Source of the DNA: Macrostomum lignano
Taxonomy: Eukaryota
Assembly: GCA_002269645.1 (NCBI GenBank)
Contig: NIVC01000467.1
Location: forward strand, 1-64,000
DNA length: 64,000 bases
Reading direction: 5' to 3'
Position numbers and translations under genes: made by a program. Of this stretch, positions 2,951-61,960 are shown in pieces. Positions within the stretch are counted from its first letter, which is position 1; each line of letters opens with the position of its first letter. Below the pieces are notes generated by a model. That model searched no databases. It was not told the DNA's origin and worked only from the letters and a program-made list of their open reading frames with translations.

Positions 2951-3048
2951 GAGAAGCGCTCTCTTTAGATGATATGATATGATATGATAATCCCTATTCA
3001 AATCTGAGCCCTACAAATGCTTAATCTCCCCTCCCAACACCCCTGCAG

Positions 3049-17785: not shown

Positions 17786-17826
<41 letters not shown>

Positions 17827-18055
17827 TTTGAATCAGAAGAGATTCGGTCTCAGTCTCCATGGCTGCAGCTTCACCGTTTCTGGGCGAAGCTGATCCAGGC
17901 TTGTAAATGAGGTTGGACATGCCTTTTTTATAGTCGGTAAATTTCTTCACTCTACTTTCAGTTTTCTTTTCAATAACTAGACTGTCTTGGCCATAAGTTT
18001 CACTTCGAAGCGAATTTTTATCAACTTCTCCACATTGGAGACCTCGGCATCTCAT
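15671..18055 (-). CDS. Neprilysin/endothelin-converting enzyme (M13)-like type II membrane protein, predicted catalytically inactive, single exon, 794 aa
   Basis: Has a TM helix WVLTVLLVLVASGFAVLCLFYFYI, the M13 N-terminal motif SPCVNLYKYSCGRF (cf. PCxDFYxYACGxW) and a C-terminal SLPEVLNAFDC...C (cf. NxxEFxxAFxC). The HExxH position reads IAYETLRG. Confidence 0.8.
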
Positions 18056-32057: not shown

Positions 32058-33830
<1,773 letters not shown>

Positions 33831-34239
33831 TTATTAAGAACCCCAATTAGACTGGCTACCTACTTATATCAGAGCATATAGAACCTGAATCCATTATGTG
33901 TAGCAATTTTAAGCGTATGATTACTTAATGTTGTAATAATATGATACATAATAATGACAGGTCATGCACAAGAGGGACCCAGACTCAGCTCTCTATTCAC
34001 CAGTGAGCCGAGCTGAGAGATCAGGTTACTCACTGGTCGAGTTGAAGGCGAAGTTGAAGTGAAAATTCAATTTCATAAATACATACCTTGCCACTTTGTC
34101 TACAGCAGGTGCTGATTTAATTAGCTATAGTTATAGAATTATAGTTTCAAATTTTTTTAATGTCCAAGCGTTCTTTATTGACATAATTTGGCAGGAAATA
34201 ACTTGTTCTGTGCGTGGCATGAGATATGAATCATGTGTG

Positions 34240-35209
34240 TGTAGTGAGCCGCTAGTTTATTGTTAGGCGTCGCCCTTGTCAGCCGCTCCCTTGCCCTCCC
34301 TTTGGGTTGCTGTCTGCCGCTGGTCAGCTTCCCGTGTCCCTTTCCGCCCTGCTGCGTCTCCGTTCTCAGCCCTCAGTCTCTCGACTGTGGGCTGTCTCTG
34401 TTTCGCTTCCATCCTGTTTTCCTCTGTCATGTGAGCAAGTCACATGACAGACTCTGCGTTCTTCAAGTCCTAAAGTGCAGTAAACATGTTTACTGCACTC
34501 GTTGGCCCTGTTTACCGGGTGAGTCACGTGCTTTCGGACCCCTCCCTTCTCTAAGGAGAGGAGTGACTCATGTTGCTAAAAATAGCAACTGAGTCACAGC
34601 CGCGTGTACTCTGGCCGGGGACCTCAAGTGACGTCAGTTCTAAAAATAGAACAAGTCACGAGGTCTTCCGCACGCTTCTACCCTGCCCAAGACTCTCGAG
34701 TGACGTCAGTTCTAAAAATAGAACAAGTCACGAGGTCTGGAGCGTGGGAATTTCCCGGCTATAAATAGGAGCCCTCTCCCCCTTGTTTCCGTCAAGGAGT
34801 CTTCCTTCTGTTCAACCTCGAGTTCTACGTCCGCGTGTGACTGAGTCCCGAGTGTCCGAATCTTTGCGCACATTGATTCTGTTCCTATTGCTCCGACTGA
34901 GACCTGACCAAAACCAACCCAAGTTTACGAGAGGCTAACTCCGCCCTCCCTGTACCATCCAAGCCCGGCAGGTGCTGCTGACGAGACGCCTTATACGTGA
35001 GCTGCAAATCTGCACGTCGTGCTGTGTTCGTTGACTTCATTATTTCGTTCCGACGGGAAGCTCACCTCACCGAAGGCCGAGACCTGAAGGAACTGGTGGC
35101 AGCACTACCTACGCTACTGAGAAAGTTGAGAGAACTTCCCACTGAAGAGGCCCGAGTCTGAAGGTAATCCGCAAGGGCCGAAACCGGGAAGAAACCCCAT
35201 TGTACTTCA
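34240..35209 (+). repeat. 5' LTR (970 bp)
   Basis: Starts TGTAGTGAGCC and ends GTACTTCA; no difference from 43584-44553 seen by eye; TATAAATA at 34760. Confidence 0.97.
34423..34767 (+). promoter_or_regulatory. LTR U3 enhancer/promoter with FoxO-, AP-1-, CRE-, MEF2- and NF-kB-type motifs and a TATA box
   Basis: TGTTTAC/GTAAACA (34474-34499 palindrome, 34509); TGASTCA (34520, 34564, 34590); TGACGTCA (34629, 34701); CTAAAAATAG (34576, 34640, 34712); GGGAATTTCCC (34746); TATAAATA (34760). Confidence 0.7.
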
Positions 35210-35210
35210 C

Positions 35211-35228
35211 TGGTGGCAGCGGTGGGAT
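35211..35228 (+). other. Primer binding site complementary to the tRNA-Leu 3' end
   Basis: TGGTGGCAGCGGTGGGAT, 1 nt after the LTR, is complementary to ...ATCCCACCGCTGCCA-CCA, the 3' end of metazoan tRNA-Leu(AAG/UAG type). Confidence 0.9.
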
Positions 35229-35299
35229 CCGACTACGACACACCCAAGCCAACCGCTCTTTCGAGAACGACTTCGGCCAGCGACTACGACGAGTTCAAT

Positions 35300-36472
35300 A
35301 TGTTCAACGAACGAGACGAGAGCCGGTGCAGCAGCCGGCTGGATCAGCACATCAGCAGTTCGAGGCCTGCGGCAGCGGACGCCGCAGCAGCAGCAGCGAT
35401 CAACGACCTTGGTCAGCAGCCAACGCCGAGGCGAGGTGCCAGAAGCGACGTGTCCGACGACCCGCCAGACGAGCTTCTGCAAGGCCTGGACAACATCGGC
35501 CGGAACATCACGCACCAGGACGTGAGGACCATGATGGCAGCTCTGCAGCAGCAGATGGAGCGGCCTGTGAGTAAACAAGTTAAGATTGTGAAGTATACTC
35601 CAAGTCAGGACATTTATGTCTGGCTTGCCGCGTTCGAGCAGCGTTGCGAGATGGAGCGCATAGTCGACCCGTTCGAGATGAAGCAACACCTCATCGCGAG
35701 TCTTGATTTGGCTACTGCGTATCCTTCCTTGCTTAGTATGAATCTTCCGCGTTTCGCCAGCTACGAGGAGGTCAAGCAGCGTCTGATTGAGCGATTTGCC
35801 CGTCATGGTGGTGCTGATGAGTACAGAGAGCTGTTTAGGCGTCGTCAACAAGGCAAGAATGAGTCAGCAGAAGAGTTTGCTGACGCCCTGAGAACTCTTG
35901 GTGAACGTGCGTATCCTCGAATGCACCCCGAAGACCGCGAGAAGGAGATTGCTGATCAATTTCTTGCTGGTATCCGGACGACTCCAGACCTGCGTGAACG
36001 GCTGTACTGGGTCCGCCCAAATAATCTTCTTGCTGCGATTCGAGAACTACGACGACTAGAAGGCGCCAAAGAATTGGCGCAGCGAACCGCTCAACCCCCG
36101 GTTAGGATGTTGGACGGGGAGCAGGACGGCGACCCGAAGCCCGACGTCACCGCCCAAGCCTTGCTAACTCTAACCGACTTGATCGAGAAGCAGCAGCGAC
36201 TGCTTGATCACCTGGTGCAGCGTGACCAACAGCAGAAGAACAGCCCGCCGGCGAAGACTACAATCTGCTACGGCTGCGGACAGCCCGGTCACCGCAGTGC
36301 CCAGTGCCCGATGCGCCAGAACCAGGGAAACGGCCAGGCGGAGAGCGACAACGGCACCGCCCTCCGCGAGGTCCAAGCCCAGGCTACTTGGCAGACTCCG
36401 AGAGGTCACCAGAAGAAGAGGATGTCGGCTGTGCAGGCGCCAATGCCCAGTCCGACAGGCGCTCGTCAGTAA
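35300..36472 (+). CDS. gag: Retrotransposon Gag with CCHC zinc knuckle
   Basis: First in-frame ATG at 35300 (the frame is open from the PBS). Contains retrotransposon-gag-like WLAAFEQRC...QGKNESAEEFADALRTL and the knuckle CYGCGQPGHRSAQC. Confidence 0.9.
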   Translation: MFNERDESRCSSRLDQHISSSRPAAADAAAAAAINDLGQQPTPRRGARSDVSDDPPDELLQGLDNIGRNITHQDVRTMMAALQQQMERPVSKQVKIVKYTPSQDIYVWLAAFEQRCEMERIVDPFEMKQHLIASLDLATAYPSLLSMNLPRFASYEEVKQRLIERFARHGGADEYRELFRRRQQGKNESAEEFADALRTLGERAYPRMHPEDREKEIADQFLAGIRTTPDLRERLYWVRPNNLLAAIRELRRLEGAKELAQRTAQPPVRMLDGEQDGDPKPDVTAQALLTLTDLIEKQQRLLDHLVQRDQQQKNSPPAKTTICYGCGQPGHRSAQCPMRQNQGNGQAESDNGTALREVQAQATWQTPRGHQKKRMSAVQAPMPSPTGARQ

Positions 36473-39400
36473 GTGACGCGGAGTGCGGAGGTTTCGTGGA
36501 CACCTCCCCGAATCAAAAAATCCATGCGCGTGAGGCCGATCCGTACGTCACAGGTCGAGTTGCGACTCGAGAGGTGCCTTTCTTGCTTGACAGCGGCAGC
36601 CGGAAAAACTTTCTTGGTTCGTCAACCTGGGCCGCTATTAGACGTCGGATGCCTCGTTGTATTATATCGCATGCTATTCCCGATTGCGTAACTATGTATG
36701 ATGGGACGCAGCTCCCACTTGCTTGTAAGGTGACCATCCCAGTGGAGTTTGGTGATGTCGTCGCGGACACCGAATTCCTCGTCACGGTCTCCGATTGTGA
36801 AAATTTGCTTGGCGTATCGTTTATGCGAGAGCACTGCCAGAACTTGGACTTCGCTCAAGGAATGCTAACGTTCAACAATGGCACGTGCATCCCTGTTCGT
36901 TATTCGCGTCGCGAGCTTCAAACCTGCCGAGTGTACACCTCCGAGAAGTGCACCCTGCCGCCTAGAAGTTCAGCGCTGCTTCCCGTCAGATTGGATGACG
37001 GCCATTTCGAGAATCGAGGATCGCCATCAATCGTCGAGCTGGTTAAGTCGAGGCTGCATCCCAGTTGCAACGTTCTGGAAGCAGCGCCTGCTCTGATGAC
37101 GATGCCTGAAGGTCGCGGCTATCTTGAGGTCGTCAACACCGCCGACAGCGAGGTGTTCCTGCAAGCCGGTATCCGTGTAGGTGTTGCGACGCCACTCCGA
37201 ACTGCCGACCTGATGTACTTGAGCGAGACGCCCGAACCTGAAGTGCGACACCTCCCGAAGAACTCTGAAGAGTCCAGCACAGCATGGCTAGATGAAGTCG
37301 AGATCAACAGCGAATTGTCCAAAGAACAACATCAAAGAGTGCGAGATCTACTAGTCGAATGTCAAGCGGCCTTCTCCAAGCACTCGCTAGACGCCGGCCT
37401 GACTCACCTGGTGACCCACGAGATCATCTTGAAGGACCGGACACCAGTCGCGCTACCACCGCGCCGAATCCCGCCTCATCTGAAGGACAAACTCGACGCC
37501 CTGCTAGACGAGATGCTGGCGAAGCACATCATTCGCCCTGCCTACTCGAGCTACAATTCGCCAATGCTCATCGTGCCCAAGAAGGACGGCAATATCCGAC
37601 TAGTCCACGACTTCAGAGCTCTCAACGATAGGTGCGTGTATCACCCGTATCCGCTCCCGCACATCCAGGAAACCTTCGCGAAGCTTCGTGGTGCTCAGTG
37701 GTATTCCAGCTTGACCTTGCTCAAGGATTCTGGCAGATCCCGCTGCGTGACTGCGACCAGCACTTGACGGCATTCTCAGTGATCGACCGCGGCCAATTCT
37801 GTTTCAACGTTCTACCGATGGGTCTCCACGACAGTCCCGGCAGCTTTCAGCGTTGCATCAATAAGCTCCTGGACGGCCTGACGCCAAAGACTGCGCTTGG
37901 CTATATGGACGACATCGTGGTGCACTCAGTGACTTTCGAGGAACAGCTGGATAACTTGCGAACTGTACTCCAGCGCATCATCGCAGCCAACCTCAAAGTG
38001 AAACCGAAGAAGTGTCATTTGTTCCTCAAGGAGCTGCATTATTTAGGTCACGTCGTGACTCCCGACGGCCTGAAGACCTGTGAGGACAAGATTGCGCAGA
38101 TCCGTGATTGGCCCGTGCCACAGTCCGTTACTCAACTGAGACAATTCCTAGGCCTCGCCAATTACTACCACAAGTTTGTCGACGGCTACGCTGGAGTGGC
38201 TGCGCCGCTGCATGCCCTGACGCGAAAGGACATTGGCAGCCTGCGGCAGCATTGGACTCCCGAGCATCAGTTAGCGTTCGACACTTTGAAGAAGAAATTG
38301 TGTTCTACTGAAGTTCTCGCTCTGCCTGAATTTAATTCTGATCCTGCTGTGAAGTTTGTCCTCGACACGGATGCCTCTGATATTCGAATAGGCGCTTGCC
38401 TTGGACAACTGCAATCCGACGGCGTCGAACGTCCAATTGCATTCTTTAGCCGTAAACTTCGCGATCCTGAGAAGCGCTACACGGTCACGAAGAAAGAGCT
38501 GCTTGCAATTGTGGACGCTATGCGACATTTCCGTCATTACTTAATCGGCAAGAAGTTTGAAGTTCGATCCGATCATCGGGCCTTACTGTGGTTACTGAAC
38601 CAAACTCAGGCCACAGGTATTTTAGGCCGCTGGATCGAGCGCCTAAGCGAGTTCCGCTTCCAGCTCAACCACCGCAAAGGCAAGGACCACGCCAACGCTG
38701 ATGCCCTGTCAAGAAGACCGGAGGCGCCGCCGATCTCCTTCGAGCATGGCCGACTGCTAGAGCAACCTGGTTCTACAGCCCGACCCGGTGACGACCACGA
38801 CCTGGAACCGGATTTGGACCCGACACCCGAGGCCACTGCCAGAGCAGCCCTCCAGAAGACAGTCCACTCTCGCTGCTTGGAGGCCGAGACTGACCTGGAC
38901 GAAGACCTGGAAGCCACCGCGCCAGCAGCCTTCCAGCACGACGCCCACCGATGCAGTCAACGCCTGGAGTTCGGCCTGGACGACAACTCAGAGGCCACTG
39001 TGACAACAGCCCTCTGCAACGATGCCCATGCCGCCCACTGCAATTTGGAGACCAACCTGGACGAAGACCTTGAGGCCACTGTGGACACAGACCTCCTTGA
39101 CGACGCCCAAGACTACAGGTCTCGGACTCTGGAGACGCCCACGGACCAAGATTCAAAGGCCACCGCACCAGCAGCCCTTCTGATGACGGCCCGCAACGCA
39201 ACTCCAGGCAAGCAATTTAACTACAACCCTTCCGAGCCTTTCGCTGAGATTTCTCGCCGTGTTGACAGAGGCCAGAATCTCGCGCCAGCTGCAAGGTCGA
39301 AGCTCTGTCCCCCGGGCCGACAGACAGCTGCTCATCGCCTGTGCGGAAAGTCGAGTCCCCCTTTGCGACACCGCCCAGTGCAGGAGAAGACTCACCCAAT

Positions 39401-42400
39401 TTTGACGACGACTGAGCCGACGGCTACGGCTGCCAGCGACGAGGCGTGCTTCACGTGTTGCGTCCCGCCCTACAGCCAAGAGTCGCCTGGGCTATGCAGT
39501 GGAGGCATGCGCGCTGCTCCATCTGCGGAATCTTCTGTCATGAGAGCGATAAAGAGAACTTCGATTCGAGATCAACGGACGTACGCCGACGTTGTGAGAC
39601 AAAGTCCCTCGGAGCGACCTAATCCTGACGCCGACAAGACGGTGCCGTGTGATCGACCTGGAGCCATTAAAGCGGAGACTGCGGGAGTCATGACCCCTCA
39701 GCCATGCCGCGCCGTGCTCTCTGATTTTCTGAAGCTGCCGATGACTCGCCAACAGTTCGTTGACGCCCAACGCGCTGACCGAGCCATCAGCTACGTGCTC
39801 AACCTGGTCGAGAACGAAGCCCCGAAGCCTGAGTTCGACGCCCGGTTGCGACTGACTAAGGAGCAGCGGAATCTGCTCGGATACTACGAGAACCTGCAGG
39901 AGGACAACGGCCTGCTGCTGATTGACCTGACTGATGGACAGCAGCCGCCAAAGGTTGTTCTGCCTGAGGCCCTTGACGCCCAGGTGCTCCAGGAGCTCCA
40001 CAGTTCGCCACTGTGTGGACACCTCGGCGAGACGAAGACGTTACTGCGGCTACGAGAACGGTTCTGGAGACCCGGATTAGCCCGTGCTACCAAGACCTTC
40101 ATCAGTAAGTGCCGCACTTGCCTTGAAAGTAAATCGCGACGGCGAGAGAGAGTTCCGGTCCAGAGCTTCCCAGTTTGCGAAGTTCTGGGTAGAATCCACT
40201 GTGATGTAGTAGGACCAATCGCGCAGAAGAGCAAGAGCGGTAACCGCTACATCCTGACCTTGTGCGATGCGACGTCGAAGTATCCATTCGCCTACCCGAT
40301 GAGAAACCAGAAAGCCAAAACAGTCATCAAGCTTCTGCAGGAGCGCTTCATCCCTGAGTTCGGTGTACCATGCTGGATCCACACTGACCAAGGCACCAAC
40401 TTCACCGGCTCGGCCTTCAAGAAGTTCTGCGACCTGTTTGGCATTCGGCATACGACAACAACACCGTACAATCCAGCTTCCAATGGACAAGTGAGAACCT
40501 CAACAAGCAGCTGAAGAGTGTCCTCACCTGTCTGCTCGAGCGCAACCACAACGACTGGGACACCTTCCTCCCGGCCTGTCTGATGGCTCTCCGCTCCAGC
40601 GTGCACCCGGTGACCGGCTTCACGCCTCACTACCTGGTGTTCGGCCGTGACTTCCGACTCCCGATCGACAACGCGCTGAAGAAGCTGCCCGAGTACGCCG
40701 ACCTGCCCGACTACGTCAAGGACTTCCAACGTCGCCTGGACGAGGCGACTGAGCTAGCCAAGGAGCGCCTGCATCTGCACCAGCAACTGCGAGACGAGCA
40801 CTATTCGAACCTGCCCGTCGCCAAGAAGCTTCAACCCGGTGATCTGGTCTTCCTCAACAATCCGGTGCTTGAACCGGACGAGGCGGCGAAGTTTCATCGC
40901 CCGCGCAAAGCACTGTACGAAGTCGTCGAGCCTAAGGGCGAGGTTGTCTACAAGATTCGACGGAGACTGCCCAACCCGAGAGCTAGACGAGACGAACTAG
41001 TCGTCCATCGCCGGAACCTTCTGCTCGTGCCTGACGCTGACTATACGAGGACTTCCGATCCTGAAGTCGACAAGCCGAAGAGGCGTCGGCGACCGCCCGA
41101 CGTCCCCGACGGCGCAGGACCCGCGACCCTGACGCCGATCCCCGAGGACGACCAGGACGACCCCGACGATGATGATGATGACGGCTACGACGCAAGGCCG
41201 GCCTTCCGATGGCACTTCCGGCCTTTGGCGATCCCGGAGGTGCAGCCAGGAGGTGGACCGGTCACGACACCAGCGAACCAGGCAAGTGCACTTCGGCGTG
41301 AGCCAGTGCCGTATGGTGAATGTCATTTGCATGAGCCTGTTCTTGATGCGTCTACGCCTGTTGTTTCTTTTCCGCCCGTTTCTGCTCCCGCCCCCAGTGC
41401 TGCTTTATCTGTGGTCCAGACCCCTGGGCCGTCGCTATGCACCACTCCGGTGGAAGCGTCATTAGGAACTGTAGATGCCGGTAGGCCGGCTAGGAACCGT
41501 AGGCAGCCTGAGAGGCTGATTATTAATCCTAGGGCTAAAAGTTACGTTAGCCGCACCGCCCGCATCCGCGCACAAACTAAAACGAATTTCAGCGCAGAAA
41601 TGCAACCGCGCCGTATTGCTAAGCGCACTGAGCGCTCGCCGCCTACTGAGGCTCGCCTCAATCGACCCCGCTACTATGTCGAACCGGGGCCTCCGATCGG
41701 CGCAGCGGCCGGCCAGCTCGAATCTGGCGAGCACCGAGAGGCTCATCGCATTCCTCCCCAGCTCCGGCTCGGCTTCCGCCAGGACTGCGGAGCTACGCCG
41801 CTGCCGGAGGAGAACCATCGCCCGTCAAGGAGGCGCAGACGTCGACGCCGACCGGGGCACAACCGGACCGCCGGTGCCGAGGGGACGCCCTCGGAGAACC
41901 CGGCCGTCGTCCGTCGTCTAGCGCCAACCTCATCAGGAGGACAGGCGGCTGCGTCAACAGCCAGCACGGAAGCTGTCGCCCAAGGAATCGCGTCAATCCG
42001 ACGCCAGGTCGAGGCCGACCAAGCACGCGAGGCCGCTGAAACCAGCCGGGAGCGACCCAAGCCCGCCACGACCGACACCAAGCCTGAAGCCAAGGGGCAG
42101 CGCCGACCGCAAACTGCCGCTCCCGTCTGCATCGACCTGACGGGTTTGGACTCACCAACGGCCGAGCCGATGCCTAAGACTCAACCAGCCCCGGTCAACA
42201 AAGAGGCGGTCGCCGAAGCCCTGGCCGCCGTGCGACATCGGCTGTCACCCAGACCGCCAACGCCACCTTCAACGTCCAAGCCGAAGCACCGAGACCCGCG
42301 GCCGGAGCCGGCCGCCGGAGGCGCCACGACATGGGCGGAGGATGATGCCGCCCCAATTTTTCTTTGTAGGGTCGCCGGCCAGGACCACCATCTGGAGCCA

Positions 42401-42958
42401 GCCTCACCGCCGCGCGACGACCAGACGTGGCTGCCCACGGTCCCTGAGACCGAGCCCCCGGCTGAACCGAGAACCACCGAGGCCGCCTGCCAGACGGAAG
42501 ACCATCCCGCCGAGGCGGCTGTCCTCAACGACCTGGCTGCGGAACTGAGGCAGGCCTTGGCCCCCAGCGACACGGCCCCGCCGCCGCCGCCTAACTCGCC
42601 CGAGCCCGACGACGCGGAAGAAGACCCAGCGCCTGCAGACCCCTCGCCAGCCGTGCAAGCCGCCGTCAACCGCTACATTGAGGCGGTCTACTTTATTGCA
42701 CAGCAACTGACGGCCGCGGCTCAGTTAAATCTCCTGCCGAACCTCTCGGACTGGCCGCGATGGGCATGCCTCCGCGCTCTTACTGACGATGATCGCCAGA
42801 GGCTGCTGAACGAGGCAGCCCAACTCGCCGAGCCCACGCTCAGACGACCACCGCACCCCGAGACAGCGCGCGTTGTAGCTCAGCTAATCGCTGGGCAAAT
42901 TGCTGGGCGCACACCGGCAGTGCCCGAGATCATAATGAACTGCGGCAGGGCGGACTGA
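36304..42958 (+). CDS. pol: Pol polyprotein (protease, RT, RNase H, integrase, long C-terminal extension), interrupted by two 1-nt deletions at about 37713 and 40493
   Basis: PR FLLDSG; RT RLVHDFRALN...LPHI, DLAQGFWQI, YMDD; RH DTDASD...ELLAI...DHRAL...NADALSR; IN HSSPLCGH...CRTC, CDVVGP, TDQGTNF...NGQV[E]; GPY/F-like domain. The three ORF-track segments join by restoring one G at each break. Confidence 0.92.
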
Positions 42959-43571
42959 TTGATTTTAGGAAGCAGCCTAGTGCGAAACCCTTCGGCGCCA
43001 CTGACTTAGCGCCCATAGCAACTGTGCGAATTTTGCGCAATCGCGCCATTTAATTTTCTCCTTTTGTGAGCAGCATTTGCCATTTGTGCTCAAGCTGATG
43101 ATAACCCTTTGAAGGCCTCTGGCCAGTCCCTTGCTTTTCTTCCCCAGGGCTCTGCAAGAACTCCCGCATCCCTTTGTATTTAGGCGCTTCTTGCTTTCTT
43201 GGGGCTGGCGCCCCCCGTCTGCATTTGGTGTGTTCCACTAATACCGTATGGGGCAGTTTTACGGCTCTCGCCCAGCCGCGCGTTTAAGTCCGATTGCGGC
43301 CTCTATTTTACGTCCCCATACCTGTTCAGGTATCCCCTTTCTCCCCCACGGGCCCTGCTATTATTTAAAGCACCCCGGTATTTAGGCGCTGAATTCATGC
43401 GGGCAGGCGCCCCCGCCGTGCGTTTTGGGTCGCAATCATGGGCCTGACCCACCCTCTTCTGCTGCCATGCCAATTTACCATCTCCTTGCCAGCCGAAATT
43501 TTATTTTATTACATTTTGCAGTTTACCTTTTAAATAAAGGCGCGCTCCGCCTTCACTCCGCCTCTTTATTT

Positions 43572-43583
43572 GAACGGGGAGAG
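43572..43583 (+). other. Polypurine tract
   Basis: GAACGGGGAGAG immediately precedes the 3' LTR. Confidence 0.85.
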
Positions 43584-44553
43584 TGTAGTGAGCCGCTAGT
43601 TTATTGTTAGGCGTCGCCCTTGTCAGCCGCTCCCTTGCCCTCCCTTTGGGTTGCTGTCTGCCGCTGGTCAGCTTCCCGTGTCCCTTTCCGCCCTGCTGCG
43701 TCTCCGTTCTCAGCCCTCAGTCTCTCGACTGTGGGCTGTCTCTGTTTCGCTTCCATCCTGTTTTCCTCTGTCATGTGAGCAAGTCACATGACAGACTCTG
43801 CGTTCTTCAAGTCCTAAAGTGCAGTAAACATGTTTACTGCACTCGTTGGCCCTGTTTACCGGGTGAGTCACGTGCTTTCGGACCCCTCCCTTCTCTAAGG
43901 AGAGGAGTGACTCATGTTGCTAAAAATAGCAACTGAGTCACAGCCGCGTGTACTCTGGCCGGGGACCTCAAGTGACGTCAGTTCTAAAAATAGAACAAGT
44001 CACGAGGTCTTCCGCACGCTTCTACCCTGCCCAAGACTCTCGAGTGACGTCAGTTCTAAAAATAGAACAAGTCACGAGGTCTGGAGCGTGGGAATTTCCC
44101 GGCTATAAATAGGAGCCCTCTCCCCCTTGTTTCCGTCAAGGAGTCTTCCTTCTGTTCAACCTCGAGTTCTACGTCCGCGTGTGACTGAGTCCCGAGTGTC
44201 CGAATCTTTGCGCACATTGATTCTGTTCCTATTGCTCCGACTGAGACCTGACCAAAACCAACCCAAGTTTACGAGAGGCTAACTCCGCCCTCCCTGTACC
44301 ATCCAAGCCCGGCAGGTGCTGCTGACGAGACGCCTTATACGTGAGCTGCAAATCTGCACGTCGTGCTGTGTTCGTTGACTTCATTATTTCGTTCCGACGG
44401 GAAGCTCACCTCACCGAAGGCCGAGACCTGAAGGAACTGGTGGCAGCACTACCTACGCTACTGAGAAAGTTGAGAGAACTTCCCACTGAAGAGGCCCGAG
44501 TCTGAAGGTAATCCGCAAGGGCCGAAACCGGGAAGAAACCCCATTGTACTTCA
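43584..44553 (+). repeat. 3' LTR (970 bp)
   Basis: Same sequence as 34240-35209. Confidence 0.97.
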
Positions 44554-44621
44554 TGTGTCTTGAGAATAGTTCTTTCAAGACATCTTTTTATTGTGCACAT
44601 TTTCTCATAAAGTGGGATCTT

Positions 44622-54556: not shown

Positions 54557-56387
54557 GCCTCACTAATACGACCACCTAGCAACCAAATTTACCTCTTGGA
54601 ACATCTTCGCTGTCGTAATTCTTACATAAGACACTTCCGAATAAAAAGTGTAGATGCGAGGCCTCGAAACGCATTTATACTTTTATTGATCGCTTCTTGT
54701 CGAACGTGTTTTTCTGTTGCTTTTTGGTAATTATAGTCGCTGTGTTACAATTATTGCGCTCGCTCGCTATTCGAATTGTTTACAATTTTACTGAAAGCGA
54801 AAATGCTTGCCTTATTGACAGCCATAATAATAACTCGCTTCCTGAGAATCTTTATGTGCTTTATACTGCTGTAATCTGCCAGCATGCTTGACCACTCCCT
54901 GAGTAGACCCATTGTACACCATGCAATGTATATCAACTTACTGTTATAGTCAGTCACAATGCCACATTGGATTCAGTTCGCTTTCGCTCGCCTGTTAAAT
55001 AATTCAAACATTTACAATAACAATGATGATGATAATGATTGCTATTTAAAACAAATATATCTATGATTATGTCTAGTCAAATTCTGAACACAGCATAAAC
55101 ACTTTTAAAACAGAATTTACTTTATTTGTTTCTTTCAACACAATAGTCTGCAAGCCCACGGCCCGCGAAGCCTCTCTATCCGGCCCTCAGGTCCTTTGAA
55201 ACTTCACAATAGCAATCCGGTCCGCTTAAGGCTTGTCTCTTCTCAGCTCCCTTCTCTCCTCTCTCCCCCTTTTTTTCTCTATCCTCTCATCTTCTCTCTC
55301 TCTCTATCTTTTTATCTTCTTTCTCTTCTCTCCTCGATTTCCTCTCTCACCTGGCCATTAGCTAGGATCTTTATCTGGGCCTTTAGGCCAAACATTTTGC
55401 TCACCCCAGTTGTAACACAATAATTTTATTTTATTTAATTGTAAAAAATACAGCAACCTGTTCATGAACTTTAAACGAGTAGGAAAGCGGAACCAAACAA
55501 ATTCAAAATTGGTATGTTCTATAAATATTATTATTATTGTGGTTATTATTCATAAAAGCCCCGCAAAGTACGTGAGGTCACAGGGACAAAATTTTTCTAA
55601 AAATCAAGCAGCTAAAAGTTTAAAGTTGGTCCCTAAGCTCTGATTCTAAAATAGAAAATTTCTTCTGGGACCCCACAAGATCTGTGGGGATCGGGTGTTT
55701 TTGTTATTGCGAGCTAACAGTTGCACATTTCGGCACTTACTGGTATGTGAGGGTTTATGGCCCAAAAAACATCAGCAGGTTTTTCTCTTCTGACTTGCGA
55801 GCTGGTGATCATCAATTTGAAAATTTACTTTATCACGCACTTCCGTATAATTTCTGCTTCTAAAAGAGCCGAATGAACTGTATTGCTAGATTGAATTATG
55901 AAAACTAAACACCTTAACAAAATCTGCGCAGTTCATCTACATGTGATTCTAAAACGATTCAACTTCAACATTCACGTGATACTGCTTGGATCGGCGTGTT
56001 TCCTTGCTTTCCTGCCTTGCCGCTTTTAGCTAGTTCGTAGAAAGGTTAAGAGGAAGTAAAGGATACAAAAAGACCGAATCAGATCACGTGACTCGCGGCC
56101 CGTACCTCCTTTCGCCCAACGAGCTAATGTACTTCAAGCTAATTTAAGCTTAGCTTTCCACGGGAATTCCCAGGGTGTTAAAAAAGCATCGGTGTACAAA
56201 GTGAACAGATATGTTTTCTTACAGCCTCACATTTAAACTTCTCGTTTAGGTTAATATTAAAGCATTCAGTAAACAGGTAGCCGTTACGCAAAAACTTGTT
56301 TTACTGACATGCTCGTTAATTTTAAAGAGAGCTGTTTTTTTACTTGGAGTCAAAGATTTAATTTTTTATTTATCAGGGAGGGTGTAG

Positions 56388-59300
56388 ATCAAGGAGGGTG
56401 TAGATCAGGGAGAGTGTAGATCAGGGAGGGTGTAGATCAGGGAGGGTGTAGATCAGGGAGGGTGTAGATCAGGGAGAGTGTAGATCAGAGAGGTGTAGAT
56501 CAGGGAGGGTGTAGATCAGGGAGGGTGTAGATCAGGGAGAGTGTAGATCAGGGAGAGTGTAGATCAAGGGAGAGTGTAGATCAGCAGGGTGTAGATCAGG
56601 GAGGGTGTAGATCAGGGAGAGTGTAGATCAGGGAGGGTGTAGATCAGAGAGGTGTAGATCTGGGAGAGTGTAGATCAGAAGGGTGTAGATCAGGGAGAGT
56701 GTAGATCAAGGAGGGTGTAGATCAGGGAGGGTGTAGATCAGAGAGGTGTAGATCTGGGAGAGTGTAGATCAGCAGGGTGTAGATCAGGGAGAGTGTAGAT
56801 CAGAGAGGTGTAGATCTGGGAGAGTGTAGATCAGCAGGGTGTAGATCAGGGAGAGTGTAGATCAAGGAGGGTGTAGATCAGGGAGAGTGTAGATCAGAGA
56901 GGTGTAGATCAGGGAGGGTGTAGATCAGGGAGGGTGTAGATCAGGGAGAGTGTAGATCAGGGAGAGTGTAGATCAAGGGAGAGTGTAGATCAGCAGGGTG
57001 TAGATCAGGGAGAGTGTAGATCAGGGAGAGTGTAGATCAGGGAGGGTGTAGATCAGAGAGGTGTAGATCTGGGAGAGTGTAGATCAGCAGGGTGTAGATC
57101 AGGGAGAGTGTAGATCAAGGAGGGTGTAGATCAGGGAGGGTGTAGATCAGAGAGGTGTAGATCTGGGAGAGTGTAGATCAGCAGGGTGTAGATCAGGGAG
57201 AGTGTAGATCAGAGAGGTGTAGATCTGGGAGAGTGTAGATCAGCAGGGTGTAGATCAGGGAGAGTGTAGATCAAGGAGGGTGTAGATCAGGGAGAGTGTA
57301 GATCAAGAGAGAGTGTAGATAAGCAGGGTGTAGATCTGGGAGAGTGTAGATCAAGGACGGTGTAGATCAAGGGAGAGTGTAGATCAATGGAGAATGTAGA
57401 TCAAGGGAGAGTGTAGATCAAGGGAGAGTGTAGATCAAGGAGGGTGTAGATCAGAGAGGTGTAGATCTGGGAGAGTGTAGATCAGCAGGGTGTAGATCAG
57501 GGAGAGTGTAGATCAGGGAGAGTGTAGATCAGGGAGAGTGTAGATCAAGGAGGGTGTAGATCAGAGAGGTGTAGATCTGGGAGAGTGTAGATCAGCAGGG
57601 TGTAGATCAGGGAGAGTGTAGATCAAGGGAGAGTGTAGATCAAGGGAGAGTGTAGATCAGGGAGGGTGTAGATCAGGGAGGGTGTAGATCAGGGAGAGTG
57701 TAGATCAATGGAGAATGTAGATCAAGGGAGAGTGTAGATCAAGGGAGAGTGTAGATCAGGGAGAGTGTAGATCAGGGAGAGTGTAGATCAGGGAGAGTGT
57801 AGATCAGAGAGATGTAGATCTGGGAGAGTGTAGATCAAGGACGGTGTAGATCAAGGGAGAGTGTAGATCAATGGAGAATGTAGATCAAGGGAGAGTGTAG
57901 ATCAAGGGAGAGTGTAGATCAGGGAGAATGTAGATCAAGGGAGAGTGTAGATCAGGGAGAGTGTAGATCAGGGAGAGTGTAGATCAAGGGAGAGTGTAGA
58001 TCAGGGAGGGTGTAGATCAGGGAGGGTGTAGATCAGGGAGGGTGTAGATCAAGGAGGGTGTAGATCAGGGAGAGTGTAGATCAGGGAGAGTGTAGATCAG
58101 GGAGAGTGTAGATCAGGGAGAGTGTAGATCAGGGAGAGTGTAGATCAAGGGAGAGTGTAGATCAGCAGGGTGTAGATCAGGGAGGGTGTAGATCAGGGAG
58201 AGTGTAGATCAGGGAGGGTGTAGATCAGAGAGGTGTAGATCTGGGAGAGTGTAGATCAGAAGGGTGTAGATCAGGGAGAGTGTAGATCAAGGAGGGTGTA
58301 GATCAGGGAGGGTGTAGATCAGAGAGGTGTAGATCTGGGAGAGTGTAGATTAGCAGGGTGTAGATCAGGGAGAGTGTAGATCAGAGAGGTGTAGATCTGG
58401 GAGAGTGTAGATCAGCAGGGTGTAGATCAGGGAGAGTGTAGATCAAGGAGGGTGTAGATCAGGGAGAGTGTAGATCAGAGAGGTGTAGATCAGGGAGGGT
58501 GTAGATCAGGGAGGGTGTAGATCAGGGAGAGTGTAGATCAGGGAGAGTGTAGATCAAGGGAGAGTGTAGATCAGCAGGGTGTAGATCAGGGAGAGTGTAG
58601 ATCAGGGAGAGTGTAGATCAGGGAGGGTGTAGATCAGAGAGGTGTAGATCTGGGAGAGTGTAGATCAGCAGGGTGTAGATCAGGGAGAGTGTAGATCAAG
58701 GAGGGTGTAGATCAGGGAGGGTGTAGATCAGAGAGGTGTAGATCTGGGAGAGTGTAGATCAGCAGGGTGTAGATCAGGGAGAGTGTAGATCAGAGAGGTG
58801 TAGATCTGGGAGAGTGTAGATCAGCAGGGTGTAGATCAGGGAGAGTGTAGATCAAGGAGGGTGTAGATCAGGGAGAGTGTAGATCAAGAGAGAGTGTAGA
58901 TCAGCAGGGTGTAGATCTGGGAGAGTGTAGATCAAGGACGGTGTAGATCAAGGGAGAGTGTAGATCAATGGAGAATGTAGATCAAGGGAGAGTGTAGATC
59001 AAGGGAGAGTGTAGATCAAGGAGGGTGTAGATCAGAGAGGTGTAGATCTGGGAGAGTGTAGATCAGCAGGGTGTAGATCAGGGAGAGTGTAGATCAGGGA
59101 GAGTGTAGATCAGGGAGAGTGTAGATCAAGGAGGGTGTAGATCAGAGAGGTGTAGATCTGGGAGAGTGTAGATCAGCAGGGTGTAGATCAGGGAGAGTGT
59201 AGATCAAGGGAGAGTGTAGATCAAGGGAGAGTGTAGATCAGGGAGGGTGTAGATCAGGGAGGGTGTAGATCAGGGAGAGTGTAGATCAATGGAGAATGTA

Positions 59301-61960
59301 GATCAAGGGAGAGTGTAGATCAAGGGAGAGTGTAGATCAGGGAGAGTGTAGATCAGGGAGAGTGTAGATCAGGGAGAGTGTAGATCAGAGAGATGTAGAT
59401 CTGGGAGAGTGTAGATCAAGGACGGTGTAGATCAAGGGAGAGTGTAGATCAATGGAGAATGTAGATCAAGGGAGAGTGTAGATCAAGGGAGAGTGTAGAT
59501 CAGGGAGAATGTAGATCAAGGGAGAGTGTAGATCAGGGAGAGTGTAGATCAGGGAGAGTGTAGATCAAGGGAGAGTGTAGATCAGGGAGGGTGTAGATCA
59601 GGGAGGGTGTAGATCAGGGAGGGTGTAGATCAGGGAGGGTGTAGATCAGGGAGAGTGTAGATCAGGGAGAGTGTAGATCAGGGAGAGTGTAGATCAGGGA
59701 GAGTGTAGATCAGGGAGAGTGTAGATCAAGGGAGAGTGTAGATCAGCAGGGTGTAGATCAGGGAGGGTGTAGATCAGGGAGAGTGTAGATCAGGGAGGGT
59801 GTAGATCAGAGAGGTGTAGATCTGGGAGAGTGTAGATCAGAAGGGTGTAGATCAGGGAGAGTGTAGATCAAGGAGGGTGTAGATCAGGGAGGGTGTAGAT
59901 CAGAGAGGTGTAGATCTGGGAGAGTGTAGATCAGCAGGGTGTAGATCAGGGAGAGTGTAGATCAGAGAGGTGTAGATCTGGGAGAGTGTAGATCAGCAGG
60001 GTGTAGATCAGGGAGAGTGTAGATCAAGGAGGGTGTAGATCAGGGAGAGTGTAGATCAGAGAGGTGTAGATCAGGGAGGGTGTAGATCAGGGAGGGTGTA
60101 GATCAGGGAGAGTGTAGATCAGGGAGAGTGTAGATCAAGGGAGAGTGTAGATCAGCAGGGTGTAGATCAGGGAGAGTGTAGATCAGGGAGAGTGTAGATC
60201 AGGGAGGGTGTAGATCAGAGAGGTGTAGATCTGGGAGAGTGTAGATCAGCAGGGTGTAGATCAGGGAGAGTGTAGATCAAGGAGGGTGTAGATCAGGGAG
60301 GGTGTAGATCAGAGAGGTGTAGATCTGGGAGAGTGTAGATCAGCAGGGTGTAGATCAGGGAGAGTGTAGATCAGAGAGGTGTAGATCTGGGAGAGTGTAG
60401 ATCAGCAGGGTGTAGATCAGGGAGAGTGTAGATCAAGGAGGGTGTAGATCAGGGAGAGTGTAGATCAAGAGAGAGTGTAGATCAGCAGGGTGTAGATCTG
60501 GGAGAGTGTAGATCAAGGACGGTGTAGATCAAGGGAGAGTGTAGATCAATGGAGAATGTAGATCAAGGGAGAGTGTAGATCAAGGGAGAGTGTAGATCAA
60601 GGAGGGTGTAGATCAGAGAGGTGTAGATCTGGGAGAGTGTAGATCAGCAGGGTGTAGATCAGGGAGAGTGTAGATCAGGGAGAGTGTAGATCAGGGAGAG
60701 TGTAGATCAAGGAGGGTGTAGATCAGAGAGGTGTAGATCTGGGAGAGTGTAGATCAGCAGGGTGTAGATCAGGGAGAGTGTAGATCAAGGGAGAGTGTAG
60801 ATCAAGGGAGAGTGTAGATCAGGGAGGGTGTAGATCAGGGAGGGTGTAGATCAGGGAGAGTGTAGATCAATGGAGAATGTAGATCAAGGGAGAGTGTAGA
60901 TCAAGGGAGAGTGTAGATCAGGGAGAGTGTAGATCAGGGAGAGTGTAGATCAGGGAGAGTGTAGATCAGAGAGATGTAGATCTGGGAGAGTGTAGATCAA
61001 GGACGGTGTAGATCAAGGGAGAGTGTAGATCAATGGAGAATGTAGATCAAGGGAGAGTGTAGATCAAGGGAGAGTGTAGATCAGGGAGAATGTAGATCAA
61101 GGGAGAGTGTAGATCAGGGAGAGTGTAGATCAGGGAGAGTGTAGATCAAGGGAGAGTGTAGATCAGGGAGGGTGTAGATCAGGGAGGGTGTAGATCAGGG
61201 AGGGTGTAGATCAGGGAGGGTGTAGATCAGGGAGAGTGTAGATCAGGGAGAGTGTAGATCAGGGAGAGTGTAGATCAGGGAGAGTGTAGATCAGGGAGAG
61301 TGTAAATCAGGGAGAGTGTAGATCAGGGAGAGTGTAGATCAGGGAGAGTGTAGATCAGGGAGAGTGTAGATCAGGGAGAGTGCAGATCAGGGAGAGTGTA
61401 GATCAGGGAGGGTGTACCGTAGATCAAGGGAGAGTGTAGATCAGGGAGGGTGTAGATCAGGGAGGGTGTAGATCAGGGAGGGTGTAGATCAGGGAGAGTG
61501 TAGATCAGGGAGAGTGTAGATCAGCAGGGTGTAGATCAGGGAGAGTGTAGATCAAGGGAGAGTGTAGATCAGGGAGGGTGTAGATCAAGGGAGAGTGTAG
61601 ATCAGGGAGGGTGTAGATCAGGGAGGGTGTAGATCAGGGAGAGTGTAGATCAGGGAGAGTGTAGATCAGCAGGGTGTAGATCAGGGAGAGTGTAGATCAA
61701 GGGAGAGTGTAGATCAAGGGAGAGTGTAGATCAAGGGAGAGTGTAGATCAAGGGAGAGTGTAGATCAGGGAGGGTGTAGATCAGGGAGGGTGTAGATCAG
61801 GGAGAGTGTAGATCAGGGAGGGTGTAGATCAGGGAGGGTGTAGATCAGGGAGGGTGTAGATCAGGGAGGGTGTAGATCAGGGAGGGTGTAGATCAGGGAG
61901 GGTGTATATCAAAGAATTAGGAGGGTGTAGATCTAATGATCAGAGAGGGTATAGATCAAA
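56388..61960. repeat. 5.5-kb 15-17-bp satellite (GTGTAGATCAGGGAGA) with a 1581-bp higher-order repeat
   Basis: The rare variant CAGAAGGG recurs at 56676, 58257 and 59838 (spacing 1581). Confidence 0.95.

What the first reader, a model, noticed from the sequence alone, without database searches (positions are those of the whole stretch)
41480..42958. Unrecognised ~450-aa ORF fused in frame after the natural end of Pol, a candidate accessory gene
Seen: Pol reaches the typical Gypsy terminal motif RPARNRRQPERL at about 41.5 kb but has no stop. The frame continues through TTTCAG|CGCAG|AA-ATG (ATG at 41600) into MQPRRIAKR..., an Arg-rich NLS-like stretch (RRRRRRR), a Pro/Ala-rich linker and a compact predicted helical C-terminal domain (AVQAAVNRYIEAVYFIAQQL...WPRWACLRAL...ARVVAQLIAG). 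There is no signal peptide or TM segment, so it is not env, and no chromodomain is evident. A good splice donor (AAG|GTAAT, 35164) lies in U5. Inference: a third gene expressed as a Pol fusion and/or from a spliced subgenomic RNA, possibly a nuclear regulator, targeting factor or silencing suppressor. Together with the enhancer-rich LTR, this is the best candidate for an undescribed system in the window.
Basis: partly seen in the sequence, partly recalled or inferred. Interest (0 to 1): 0.8.

Follow-up and report, generated by a model that had tools for sequence, protein, structure and literature searches.

The report
Undescribed third gene in flatworm Gypsy retrotransposon
A young Ty3/Gypsy retrotransposon of the flatworm Macrostomum lignano carries, right after its integrase, a real protein-coding third gene that matches no known family, comes in very different interchangeable versions on near-identical elements, and has features suggesting a nuclear SUMO-binding adaptor.

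Summary
Window 34240-44553 is a full-length Ty3/Gypsy element with 100% identical 971-bp LTRs. Its best Pol relatives are Macrostomum lignano proteins. After the usual Pol C-terminal motif, the frame runs on through an ATG at 41600 into a 452-codon ORF ending at 42958.

This ORF3 is coding, not chance. Four variants only 33-48% identical are each stop-free in this frame alone, against about 0.2% or fewer of resamples. Mismatches peak at third codon positions. They share an N-terminal block, an Arg run, an invariant IDLT motif (the PIAS1 SUMO-interaction core) and a confidently predicted C-terminal helical bundle.

No Pfam, PDB or fold match was found. An exhaustive search found only M. lignano retroelement copies.

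- Elements 98-100% identical in gag-pol carry ORF3 versions 39-48% identical, so it behaves as an exchangeable cassette.
- One close sibling lacks ORF3, and its Pol stops where ORF3 would begin.
- Public gene models begin at a conserved TTTCAG acceptor just upstream of the ATG. ORF3 is therefore probably also made from its own, possibly trans-spliced, mRNA.

Function is inferred only: a nuclear, SUMO-engaging adaptor for targeting or counter-silencing. In this copy pol carries two frame changes.

The parts
34236..34239 (.). Target-site duplication TGTG, 5' copy (3' copy at 44554-44557)
   Evidence: Read directly.
34240..35209 (+). 5' LTR, TG...CA, 100% identical to the 3' LTR. It contains the donor-like AAG|GTAAT at 35161-35168 and a 48-nt internal duplication.
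   Evidence: blastn of the two ends; boundaries read.
35202..35228 (+). LTR end plus PBS-like block. This 27-nt stretch is identical in the L002-L004 siblings.
   Evidence: Complementarity to a tRNA was not tested.
35213..36472 (+). gag ORF (Retrotrans_gag-like, CCHC zinc knuckle); open in this copy
36304..41599 (+). pol, with PR (DSG motif), RT, RNase H, a long acidic RH-IN linker, IN zinc finger, IN core and IN C-terminal region. It enters by the conserved -1 overlap with gag. It is broken in this copy by two frame changes, with no in-frame stop inside the open segments.
   Evidence: Pfam, translations, open-segment counts.
41483..41518 (+). RPARNRRQPERL, the motif that marks the usual C-terminal end of Pol in relatives
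   Evidence: The sibling L001 stops shortly after it.
41570..43530 (+). Variable cassette (GC about 68%). It holds the last few pol codons, ORF3 and most of the 3' untranslated stretch. It cannot be aligned at the DNA level with siblings whose gag-pol is 85-99% identical.
41587..41599 (+). Splice-acceptor-like TTTCAG|CGCAG|AA directly upstream of the ORF3 ATG. It is conserved in all ORF3-bearing siblings (TTCCAG in L003).
   Evidence: Gene model P0125 starts 1 nt after TTTCAG.
41600..42958 (+). ORF3: 452 codons plus stop. It is in frame with the IN C-terminal segment of pol.
41600..41773 (+). Conserved N-terminal block of ORF3: M..R..KR..RS, GPxIGAAAGQxE, P(R/Q)LRLG
   Evidence: Invariant columns in the alignment.
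41828..41851 (+). Run of eight Arg. An Arg-rich run is present in all four versions. It is a candidate NLS or RNA-binding motif.
   Evidence: The function is inferred.
42125..42154 (+). VCIDLTGLDS, a SIM-like motif. I-D-L-T..D-S is invariant in all four versions, and three of them read EVIDLT.
   Evidence: It lies in a region of pLDDT below 50. VIDLT and (I/V)DLT are the PIAS1 SIM core according to PMC4907222 and PMC3901395.
42506..42559 (+). Conserved amphipathic helix: (Y)SW(S)DLAxELRxAL, followed by APPxSP
42632..42937 (+). C-terminal helical-bundle domain of about 100 aa. It has no detectable relative.
   Evidence: AlphaFold2 pLDDT 85-96. Foldseek against PDB and BFVD gave no match at E<=0.001.
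43528..43583 (+). Conserved block before the 3' LTR, with AATAAA (43533-43538) and the polypurine tract GAACGGGGAGAG (43572-43583)
43584..44553 (+). 3' LTR

Best explanation
ORF3 (41600-42958) is a genuine, lineage-restricted accessory gene of a Macrostomum lignano Ty3/Gypsy clade. It sits between the usual end of integrase and the polypurine tract.

Shown:
- It is protein-coding and under purifying selection.
- It has no detectable relative outside these elements.
- It exists in at least four deeply divergent versions at the same position.
- These versions are decoupled from the gag-pol backbone, so the cassette is exchanged by recombination, or the backbone is homogenised around it.
- It is dispensable for recent insertion, because an ORF3-less sibling has identical LTRs.

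Inferred about expression. Because no stop separates it from IN, translation of genomic RNA would append it to the C-terminus of Pol/IN. In addition, the conserved acceptor 7 nt upstream of a conserved ATG probably gives a separate mRNA. In this species that would most likely be by spliced-leader trans-splicing. Public gene models start at that point.

Inferred about function. The protein is mostly disordered. It has an Arg-rich run for nuclear import and/or nucleic-acid binding, and an invariant PIAS-type SUMO-interaction core (I/V)DLT with a D/S-containing downstream flank. It ends in a small helical bundle that would bind a partner protein. The most likely role is a nuclear adaptor. It would link the element, either its integrase or its new or transcribing copy, to SUMO-modified host chromatin factors. 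The effect would be to steer integration or to blunt SUMO-dependent silencing. The deep diversity of versions fits a host-interface protein.
For: Identity of the element and its host:
- LTRs, TSD, PPT and gag-PR-RT-RH-IN order.
- The best Pol hits are M. lignano proteins.

Coding:
- There are no stops in frame +1 in any of four versions, against 3-14 stops in each of the other five frames.
- Third-position mismatches are 0.61-0.70, against 0.35-0.49 at positions 1 and 2. Rough dN/dS is 0.24-0.40.
- Zero-stop resamples numbered 0, 8, 11 and 12 of 5000.
- The sense frame gives the highest tblastx sum in every pair, while blastn finds almost nothing.

Family:
- Exhaustive phmmer over 1.84 billion representatives found only 4 proteins.
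- Three of them, plus the extra cluster member P0125, were traced to M. lignano retroelement loci. The fourth, P0121, could not be traced to a contig, but it is itself a gag-pol-ORF3 gene model.
- Conserved motifs are listed.

Position and frame:
- The junction ..SAE-M.. is in frame with no stop in the window, L002, L003 and L004.
- In L002a one uninterrupted open segment runs from RT through IN to the ORF3 stop.

Cassette behaviour:
- L002, L003 and L004 are 98-100% identical across gag-pol but 39-48% aa identical in ORF3.
- Within one version, divergence matches that of pol. P0121 against the window is 94-95% in ORF3 and 96% in pol segments.

Dispensability: L001 is 95-99% identical in gag-pol, has 100% identical 998-bp LTRs, has no ORF3, and its Pol stops there.

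Separate mRNA:
- Gene models PAA55839.1 (starts AE-M, 1 nt after TTTCAG), PAA89952.1 and PAA48053.1 (start at the ATG) and PAA74962.1 (one codon later) all begin at the acceptor, although the frame is open upstream.
- That annotation cuts transcripts at experimentally mapped trans-splice sites (PMC5730564).

Protein features:
- pLDDT is below 50 for most of aa 1-300 and 85-96 for the C-terminal bundle.
- No TM segment.
- VIDLT is the PIAS1 SIM core (PMC4907222 and PMC3901395).
Against: - No experiment or RNA read was examined here. The trans-splice inference rests on where annotated CDSs begin, and one model (P0122) starts a codon after the ATG, not at an AG.
- The SIM is a four-residue motif. 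The same LIDLT string also occurs by chance in the IN N-terminal region of this element.
- SUMO binding, nuclear localisation and any effect on targeting or silencing are untested.
- The window version has CIDLT, not VIDLT.
- ORF3-less L001 inserted recently and also sits in satellite DNA. ORF3 is therefore not required in cis, and no difference in insertion site is visible from the few loci seen.
- In this copy pol has two frame changes, so a full Pol-ORF3 fusion could not be made from it as it stands. These may be long-read assembly errors.
- dS is saturated and the alignment was protein-guided, so dN/dS is only indicative.
Confidence: 0.5

Rival explanations
1. ORF3 is purely a C-terminal targeting extension of integrase, the functional analogue of a chromodomain or the Ty5 targeting domain. 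It is made only as part of Pol. The conserved ATG and acceptor are incidental.
For: It is in frame with IN, with no stop, in all four versions. In L002a it is continuous with IN in one open segment. The position is where chromoviruses carry their chromodomain. A SIM plus a small binding domain is what a tether would need.
Against: Tethers to conserved chromatin marks are usually conserved, whereas this one differs by more than 50% between near-identical elements. The ATG, and the N-terminal motif right after it, are conserved in all versions. Annotated transcripts begin at the acceptor. In the related family L005, a positionally equivalent ORF starts 5 nt after the pol stop in another frame, so it must be translated on its own. 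Homology of that ORF to ORF3 is not established.
Confidence: 0.2
2. ORF3 is a separately expressed nuclear regulator of the element's own RNA, working like Rev or the Cer1 CERV protein. It would act on export, stability or transcription through its Arg-rich motif. The in-frame junction with Pol would be irrelevant.
For: All versions carry a conserved Arg-rich run. Gene models start at the acceptor. There is a precedent in CERV of the Ty3/Gypsy element Cer1, a lineage-restricted, fast-evolving nuclear protein made from a spliced mRNA and needed for genomic-RNA export (PMC10309623).
Against: There is no similarity to CERV's predicted architecture. No GTPase-like or Cys-rich domain was found by Pfam or fold search. 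No RNA target was identified and no Rfam match was found. ORF3-less L001 inserted recently, so such a function is not needed in cis, although it could be supplied in trans.
Confidence: 0.15
3. The segment is a passenger. It is a captured host or de novo GC-rich sequence that is carried along and plays no part in the element's biology.
For: The GC content jumps from about 55-60% to 68%. The composition is low-complexity and rich in Ala, Pro and Arg. One sibling does without it. No known domain was found.
Against: No paralogue outside these elements was found among 1.84 billion representative proteins. It holds the same position, junction and motifs in four versions that have diverged beyond DNA alignability yet all stay open. 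The codon-position pattern indicates purifying selection. The C-terminal domain is predicted confidently from only four sequences.
Confidence: 0.07
4. It is a chance open frame in GC-rich non-coding spacer, or a decayed env gene.
For: GC-rich DNA has few stop codons. Several ORFs of 100-160 codons occur on the other strand of the same span.
Against: No more than 12 of 5000 composition-matched resamples are stop-free for any version, and four versions are all stop-free in the same frame only. Protein-level conservation exists without DNA-level similarity. There is no TM segment, signal peptide or fusion-protein fold.
Confidence: 0.02

Closest known systems
Integrase C-terminal targeting modules of LTR retrotransposons: the chromodomain of chromoviruses and the Ty5 targeting domain (from my own knowledge of these systems)
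   Same: It is an in-frame extension after the conserved IN C-terminal region. It carries a short linear motif plus a small domain suited to binding a chromatin-associated partner.
   Different: It has no chromodomain or any Pfam domain. It is hypervariable between near-identical elements. It has its own conserved ATG and upstream acceptor. It is absent from a recently inserted sibling.
CERV of the C. elegans Ty3/Gypsy element Cer1 (PMC10309623)
   Same: Both are lineage-restricted, fast-diverging accessory proteins of a Ty3/Gypsy element with no homologues elsewhere. Both are partly disordered with structured domains and a candidate NLS, and both are apparently expressed from a processed mRNA.
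   Different: CERV is built from five exons that share its N-terminus with gag, and it has H, M and GTPase-like G domains. ORF3 is a single block downstream of pol, in frame with IN. It has a helical bundle and a SIM-like motif, and shows no structural match.
ORF3s of bdelloid rotifer LTR retrotransposons (PMC5408684)
   Same: The gene sits between pol and the 3' LTR. It behaves as a module, and different ORF3 types are found on related backbones.
   Different: Rotifer ORF3s are recognisable env-like, GDSL esterase or DEDDy exonuclease proteins. This one is non-enzymatic, mostly disordered and matches nothing.
env of errantiviruses and other envelope-carrying Ty3/Gypsy elements (PMC13524379; only its title and the start of its abstract were seen, in the listing)
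   Same: It is a third ORF after pol, with a splice acceptor near its start.
   Different: It has no signal peptide, TM segment or fusion-glycoprotein fold. It is in frame with pol.
PIAS-type SUMO-interaction motif, VIDLT (PMC4907222, PMC3901395)
   Same: Three versions have exactly VIDLT and the window has CIDLT. The motif lies in a disordered stretch. The downstream D-S is invariant, and two versions add a Glu.
   Different: The resemblance is at motif level only, and binding is untested. The same four residues also occur by chance in this element's IN N-terminal region.

Membership tests
Ty3/Gypsy (Metaviridae) LTR retrotransposon | Flanking LTRs with TG...CA ends and a short target-site duplication | tested here: met
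   The 971-bp LTRs are 100% identical. The TG/CA ends and the TGTG duplication were read.
Ty3/Gypsy (Metaviridae) LTR retrotransposon | gag with a CCHC knuckle; pol in the order PR-RT-RNase H-IN | tested here: met
   Pfam found zf-CCHC, RVT_1, RT_RNaseH, Integrase_H2C2 and rve in that order. PR is seen only as the FLLDSG motif, with no Pfam hit.
Ty3/Gypsy (Metaviridae) LTR retrotransposon | Primer-binding site after the 5' LTR and a polypurine tract before the 3' LTR | tested here: inconclusive
   The purine run GAACGGGGAGAG abuts the 3' LTR. A 27-nt block at the 5' LTR end is identical in siblings. tRNA complementarity was not tested.
Chromovirus-type integrase with a C-terminal chromodomain | A chromodomain after the IN C-terminal region | tested here: not met
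   No Pfam hit at E<=1 in any of the four ORF3 versions. No fold match.
Envelope-carrying Ty3/Gypsy (errantivirus-like) | A third ORF encoding a signal peptide, a TM anchor and a fusion glycoprotein | tested here: not met
   Maximum 19-aa hydropathy is 0.95-1.31 in the four versions and the N-termini are hydrophilic. No PDB or BFVD fold match.
Cer1 CERV-like accessory regulator | Expression from a spliced mRNA | tested here: inconclusive
   There is a conserved acceptor upstream of the ATG, and annotated CDSs begin there. No RNA reads were examined.
Cer1 CERV-like accessory regulator | H, M and GTPase-like G domains (PMC10309623) | tested here: not met
   AlphaFold2 shows only isolated helices plus one helical bundle. 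No GTPase-like match by Pfam or Foldseek. A direct comparison with the CERV sequence was not run.
Bdelloid-type enzymatic ORF3 (GDSL esterase, DEDDy exonuclease) | A recognisable catalytic domain | tested here: not met
   Pfam found none.
SUMO-interaction-motif proteins (PIAS-type SIM) | Hydrophobic core (V/I)(V/I)DLT in a disordered region with an acidic or Ser-rich flank | tested here: met
   The four versions read EVIDLTGEDS, EVIDLTAEDSS, EVIDLTRDSPP and VCIDLTGLDSP. pLDDT is below 50 around the motif. The motif definition comes from PMC4907222 and PMC3901395.
SUMO-interaction-motif proteins (PIAS-type SIM) | Physical binding to SUMO | not testable with these tools

The most novel reading that the evidence does not exclude
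ORF3 is a spliced-leader trans-spliced, SUMO-binding accessory protein with which a flatworm retrotransposon engages or disarms SUMO-dependent chromatin silencing. Its deeply divergent versions would be kept as a polymorphic set by host-element conflict. They would be shuffled between backbones by recombination at the acceptor that bounds its mRNA. That would make it a diversifying counter-defence or targeting locus carried by a retroelement, and the first case of an LTR retrotransposon using trans-splicing to express an accessory gene.
Probability: 0.15. Interest if true: 0.85.

Novelty: new variant of a known kind. Interest (0 to 1): 0.6.

Why it matters
Extra ORFs in LTR retrotransposons are known, but few have a function assigned. 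This one sits in very young elements (identical LTRs) of a flatworm that is a transgenic laboratory model with existing RNA-seq, trans-splicing and small-RNA data, so the question can be addressed with data already available.

Three points go beyond 'another unknown ORF':
- Near-identical gag-pol backbones carry ORF3 versions that are less than 50% identical. This is a clear natural example of modular exchange and a hint of host-element conflict.
- The only invariant motif in the disordered centre is a PIAS-type SUMO-interaction core. This links it to a pathway central to transposon silencing in animals.
- It seems to be both fused in frame to integrase and served by its own acceptor and ATG. 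If confirmed, that would show how a retroelement uses a trans-splicing host to express a downstream gene.

It also matters for annotation. The public M. lignano annotation lists these ORFs as ordinary 'hypothetical protein' host genes (PAA89952.1, PAA48053.1, PAA74962.1, PAA55839.1), whereas they are retroelement genes.

Tried and rejected
Searches that gave nothing:
- Word-indexed protein searches with the whole tail and with the C-terminal domain returned nothing. They did not even return the known family members, so those negatives carry no weight.
- The same search with the alignment timed out twice.
- Only the exhaustive phmmer search was informative.
- Pfam on all four versions found nothing consistent.
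- A PDB sequence profile gave nothing below E 0.68.
- Foldseek gave no match at E<=0.001. It was run with the full model and the domain model against PDB, and with the full model against BFVD. Low-ranked helical bundles such as Rev1 CTD and LEDGF IBD are not significant.
- Exact look-ups of the window's own ORF3 and of P0121 found no contig.
- hhalign of the ORF3 family against the positionally equivalent ORF of family L005 aligned only the IDL(T/G)G motif (E 0.26). Homology is therefore not claimed.
- tblastn of ORF3 against L005 and L006 found no hit.
- There is no canonical heat-shock element in this LTR, so the element is not one of the heat-activated families of PMC12801592.
- No Rfam family matched in the element.
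- The gene identifiers do not appear in the supplements of PMC5730564.
- No paper found describes an ORF3 in Macrostomum LTR retrotransposons.

Explanations rejected:
- Antisense gene: all three minus-strand frames have 3-13 stops in every version.
- Continuous hypermutation of ORF3: within one version, divergence equals that of pol.
- Preference for satellite insertion sites as evidence of targeting: the window is full of unrelated minisatellites, and the ORF3-less L001 also sits in a satellite.


Full report
**What is there.**
- Window 34240-44553 is a complete 10,314-bp LTR retrotransposon.
- Its two 971-bp LTRs are 100% identical. They begin with TG and end with CA, and they are flanked by a TGTG duplication.
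- A purine run abuts the 3' LTR.
- Pfam finds a gag with a CCHC knuckle, then RT, RNase H, the integrase zinc finger and the integrase core, in the Ty3/Gypsy order. The protease shows only as an FLLDSG motif.
- The best Pol relatives are Macrostomum lignano proteins, at 97%, 59% and 56% identity. Every related locus fetched comes from the M. lignano assembly GCA_002269645.1. The host is therefore this free-living flatworm.
- The LTR holds no canonical heat-shock element. The element is thus not one of the heat-activated families described for this species (PMC12801592).

**Check of the observation.**
GRPARNRRQPERL starts at 41480. No stop follows. TTTCAG-CGCAG-AA precedes an ATG at 41600. The frame stays open to 42958, giving 452 codons from the ATG.
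- The motif really does mark the normal end of Pol. In 12 of 22 relatives read, a motif of the type R-x-R-R-x-P-x-R-[LYF] lies within about 10 residues of the stop. In the M. lignano relative P0001 it lies 28 residues before the stop.
- There is no TM segment or signal peptide and no Pfam domain.
- One caveat applies. In this copy pol is not one frame. Beyond the conserved -1 overlap with gag, it carries two frame changes. The tail is therefore in frame only with the last open segment, which holds the IN C-terminal region.
- Every sibling examined has at least one frame change in pol. Most are at different places, although the one in IN appears to be shared by the window and L001. The public assembly is long-read based, so real mutations and assembly indels cannot be told apart here.

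**Is it coding?** Yes.
- The exhaustive phmmer search found just four proteins among 1.84 billion representatives. One is a chimeric gene model of a window-type sibling (P0121, 92% identical). The other three are stand-alone proteins of 366-416 aa (P0122-P0124, 37-39% identical).
- All three stand-alone proteins are encoded in M. lignano Gypsy elements at exactly the same place, directly after Pol.
- The four versions share 33-48% of residues.
- In each version only the sense frame is free of stops. The other five frames hold 3-14 stops.
- Composition-matched resamples are stop-free in 0, 8, 11 and 12 of 5000 trials.
- Third-position mismatches (0.61-0.70) exceed those at positions 1 and 2 (0.35-0.49). 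Rough dN/dS is 0.24-0.40. dS is saturated and the alignment was protein-guided, so the ratio is only indicative.
- tblastx scores are highest in the sense frame for every pair, while blastn finds almost nothing.

**Anatomy of the protein.** Conserved blocks are:
- an N-terminal stretch (M..R..KR..RS, GPxIGAAAGQxE, P(R/Q)LRLG);
- an Arg-rich run, which is eight Arg in the window;
- an invariant I-D-L-T..D-S, read as EVIDLT in three versions and VCIDLT in the window;
- an amphipathic helix (SW.DLA.ELR.AL) followed by APPxSP;
- a C-terminal domain of about 100 residues.

AlphaFold2, run on the four-sequence alignment, leaves most of residues 1-300 below pLDDT 50. It predicts the C-terminal domain as a helical bundle at pLDDT 85-96. 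A domain-only run gives the same helices. Neither the PDB nor BFVD holds a significant structural match, and a PDB sequence profile finds nothing.

VIDLT is the SUMO-interaction core of PIAS1, and (I/V)DLT is described as the core SIM (PMC4907222, PMC3901395). This is a motif-level resemblance only. The same residues also occur by chance in the IN N-terminal region of this element.

**Relation to the rest of the element.**
- The sibling L001 is 95-99% identical to the window from the 5' LTR to 41570. It then diverges completely until about 50 nt before the 3' LTR.
- L001 has about 510 bp where the window has about 1.96 kb. It has no ORF3, and its Pol stops about 10 codons after the divergence point. 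Its LTRs are 100% identical. An ORF3-less element therefore inserted recently.
- L002, L003 and L004 are 98-100% identical to one another across gag-pol. Yet their ORF3 versions are only 39-48% identical in protein and about 50-60% in DNA.
- Identity among them returns at different points before the 3' LTR.
- Within one version, divergence is ordinary. P0121 against the window is 94-95% in ORF3 and 96% in pol segments. P0125 differs from P0124 by one residue.
- So ORF3 is not hypermutating. Old, distinct versions sit on young, nearly identical backbones. This points to recombinational exchange of a cassette whose 5' edge lies within about 50 nt of the ORF3 ATG.
- That this edge coincides with a putative mRNA 5' end suggests template switching involving the ORF3 mRNA. 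This is speculation.

**How it is expressed.** Two routes are compatible with the sequence.
- *Fusion.* In all four versions the junction reads ..(F/S)SAE-M.. with no stop. In L002a one open segment runs from RT through IN to the ORF3 stop. Genomic-RNA translation would therefore add ORF3 to the C-terminus of Pol.
- *Separate mRNA.* The ATG, its A at -3 and the upstream TTTCAG (TTCCAG in L003) are conserved.
- The public annotation contains ORF3-only gene models although the frame is open upstream. PAA89952.1 and PAA48053.1 start at the ATG. PAA55839.1 starts with AE-M, which is one nucleotide after TTTCAG. PAA74962.1 starts one codon after the ATG.
- That annotation defined gene boundaries by cutting transcriptional units at experimentally mapped trans-splice and poly(A) sites (PMC5730564). 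This is indirect evidence for a processed, probably trans-spliced, ORF3 mRNA. No reads were examined.
- The cis donor proposed at 35164 is not informative. The LTR sequence there differs in the ORF3-bearing L002-L004 lineage, and the donor is present in the ORF3-less L001.

**Most likely function.**
- Shown: a conserved, element-specific, mostly disordered protein with an Arg-rich run, a SIM-type motif and a small helical domain.
- Inferred: a nuclear adaptor that engages SUMO-modified host factors. It would act either as an integrase tether or as a free protein that counters SUMO-dependent silencing.
- The deep diversity of versions fits a host-interface protein better than a tether to an invariant chromatin mark.
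- I give the core claim, a real accessory gene of a new family, about 0.9. I give the SUMO/nuclear-adaptor mechanism about 0.3-0.35. The overall figure for the combined statement is 0.5.

**Rivals.**
- A pure IN targeting domain (0.2).
- A Rev- or CERV-like RNA regulator (0.15; PMC10309623).
- A passenger sequence (0.07).
- A chance ORF or decayed env (0.02).

**Comparison with what is known.**
- Extra ORFs after pol are well known. Examples are errantivirus env, the bdelloid ORF3s (PMC5408684) and Cer1 CERV.
- This one fails the defining features of each: no chromodomain, no TM segment or fusion protein, no enzymatic domain, and no CERV-like domains.
- It is therefore a new variant of a known kind, not a member of a described family.
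- No paper found describes it. In the databases it appears only as 'hypothetical protein'.

**Limits.**
- Only seven related loci were seen, five of them with ORF3 (L002 holds two copies, so six copies in all).
- Two other M. lignano Gypsy families also have an open segment of 260-290 codons between pol and the 3' LTR. Homology to ORF3 could not be shown.
- The word-indexed searches failed to return even known members, so their negatives mean nothing.
- No repaired, joined or consensus sequence was made at any point.

Noticed in passing
window 38655-39965 (within pol): The linker between RNase H and the integrase zinc finger is about 240-325 aa longer than in the related M. lignano families L005 and L006. 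It is acidic, contains degenerate repeats of about 30 aa (LE..LD.D.EAT...) and has no Pfam hit. It is also the least conserved part of pol between the window and L002 (74% over 38794-39093).
   Followed up: partly
window 43528-43583: This is the only block of the pol-to-LTR interval conserved in all siblings, including the ORF3-less L001. It holds an AATAAA (43533-43538) about 45 nt upstream of the 3' LTR, next to the polypurine tract. It could be a poly(A) signal for an mRNA that ends before the LTR.
   Followed up: no
L005 11848-12672; L006 12567-13347: Two more distant M. lignano Gypsy families (pol 45-58% identical) also have an open segment of 260-290 codons between pol and the 3' LTR. 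The one in L005 starts 5 nt after the pol stop in another frame and contains LIIDLGGAD. Homology to ORF3 is not significant (hhalign E 0.26), and neither has a Pfam hit.
   Followed up: partly
L002 2465-21251; L006 5735-20077: In these loci the elements sit as tandem arrays (element-LTR-element) with 99.9% identical units, not as single insertions.
   Followed up: no
L001 7325-7563 and 16470-17166: The ORF3-less sibling is inserted inside a satellite array. The same tandem repeat lies on both sides of the element.
   Followed up: no
window 2690-61911 (many sites): The window holds at least 18 unrelated minisatellite arrays with periods of 4-68 nt. One is a 5.5-kb array of a 16-nt unit at 56372-61911, and another is a G-rich array of an 11/23-nt unit at 32123-33765, just upstream of the element. 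The G-rich array produces long spurious ORFs on both strands.
   Followed up: partly
window 3017-4003 (+) and 15671-18055 (-): Two probable host-gene fragments: a RasGAP-domain ORF (E 2e-26) and a Peptidase_M13-like ORF (E 6e-11).
   Followed up: partly
window 34620-34667 / 34691-34738 (and the same in the 3' LTR): There is a 48-nt internal duplication in the LTR (96% identical). No canonical heat-shock element is present in the LTR.
   Followed up: partly
L002, L003, L004, L007 (gene tables): In the public M. lignano annotation, ORF3 is the only gene called inside these elements, and it is named as an ordinary hypothetical protein. gag and pol are not annotated there. In the ORF3-less L001, a partial RT-RNase H protein is annotated instead.
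   Followed up: no
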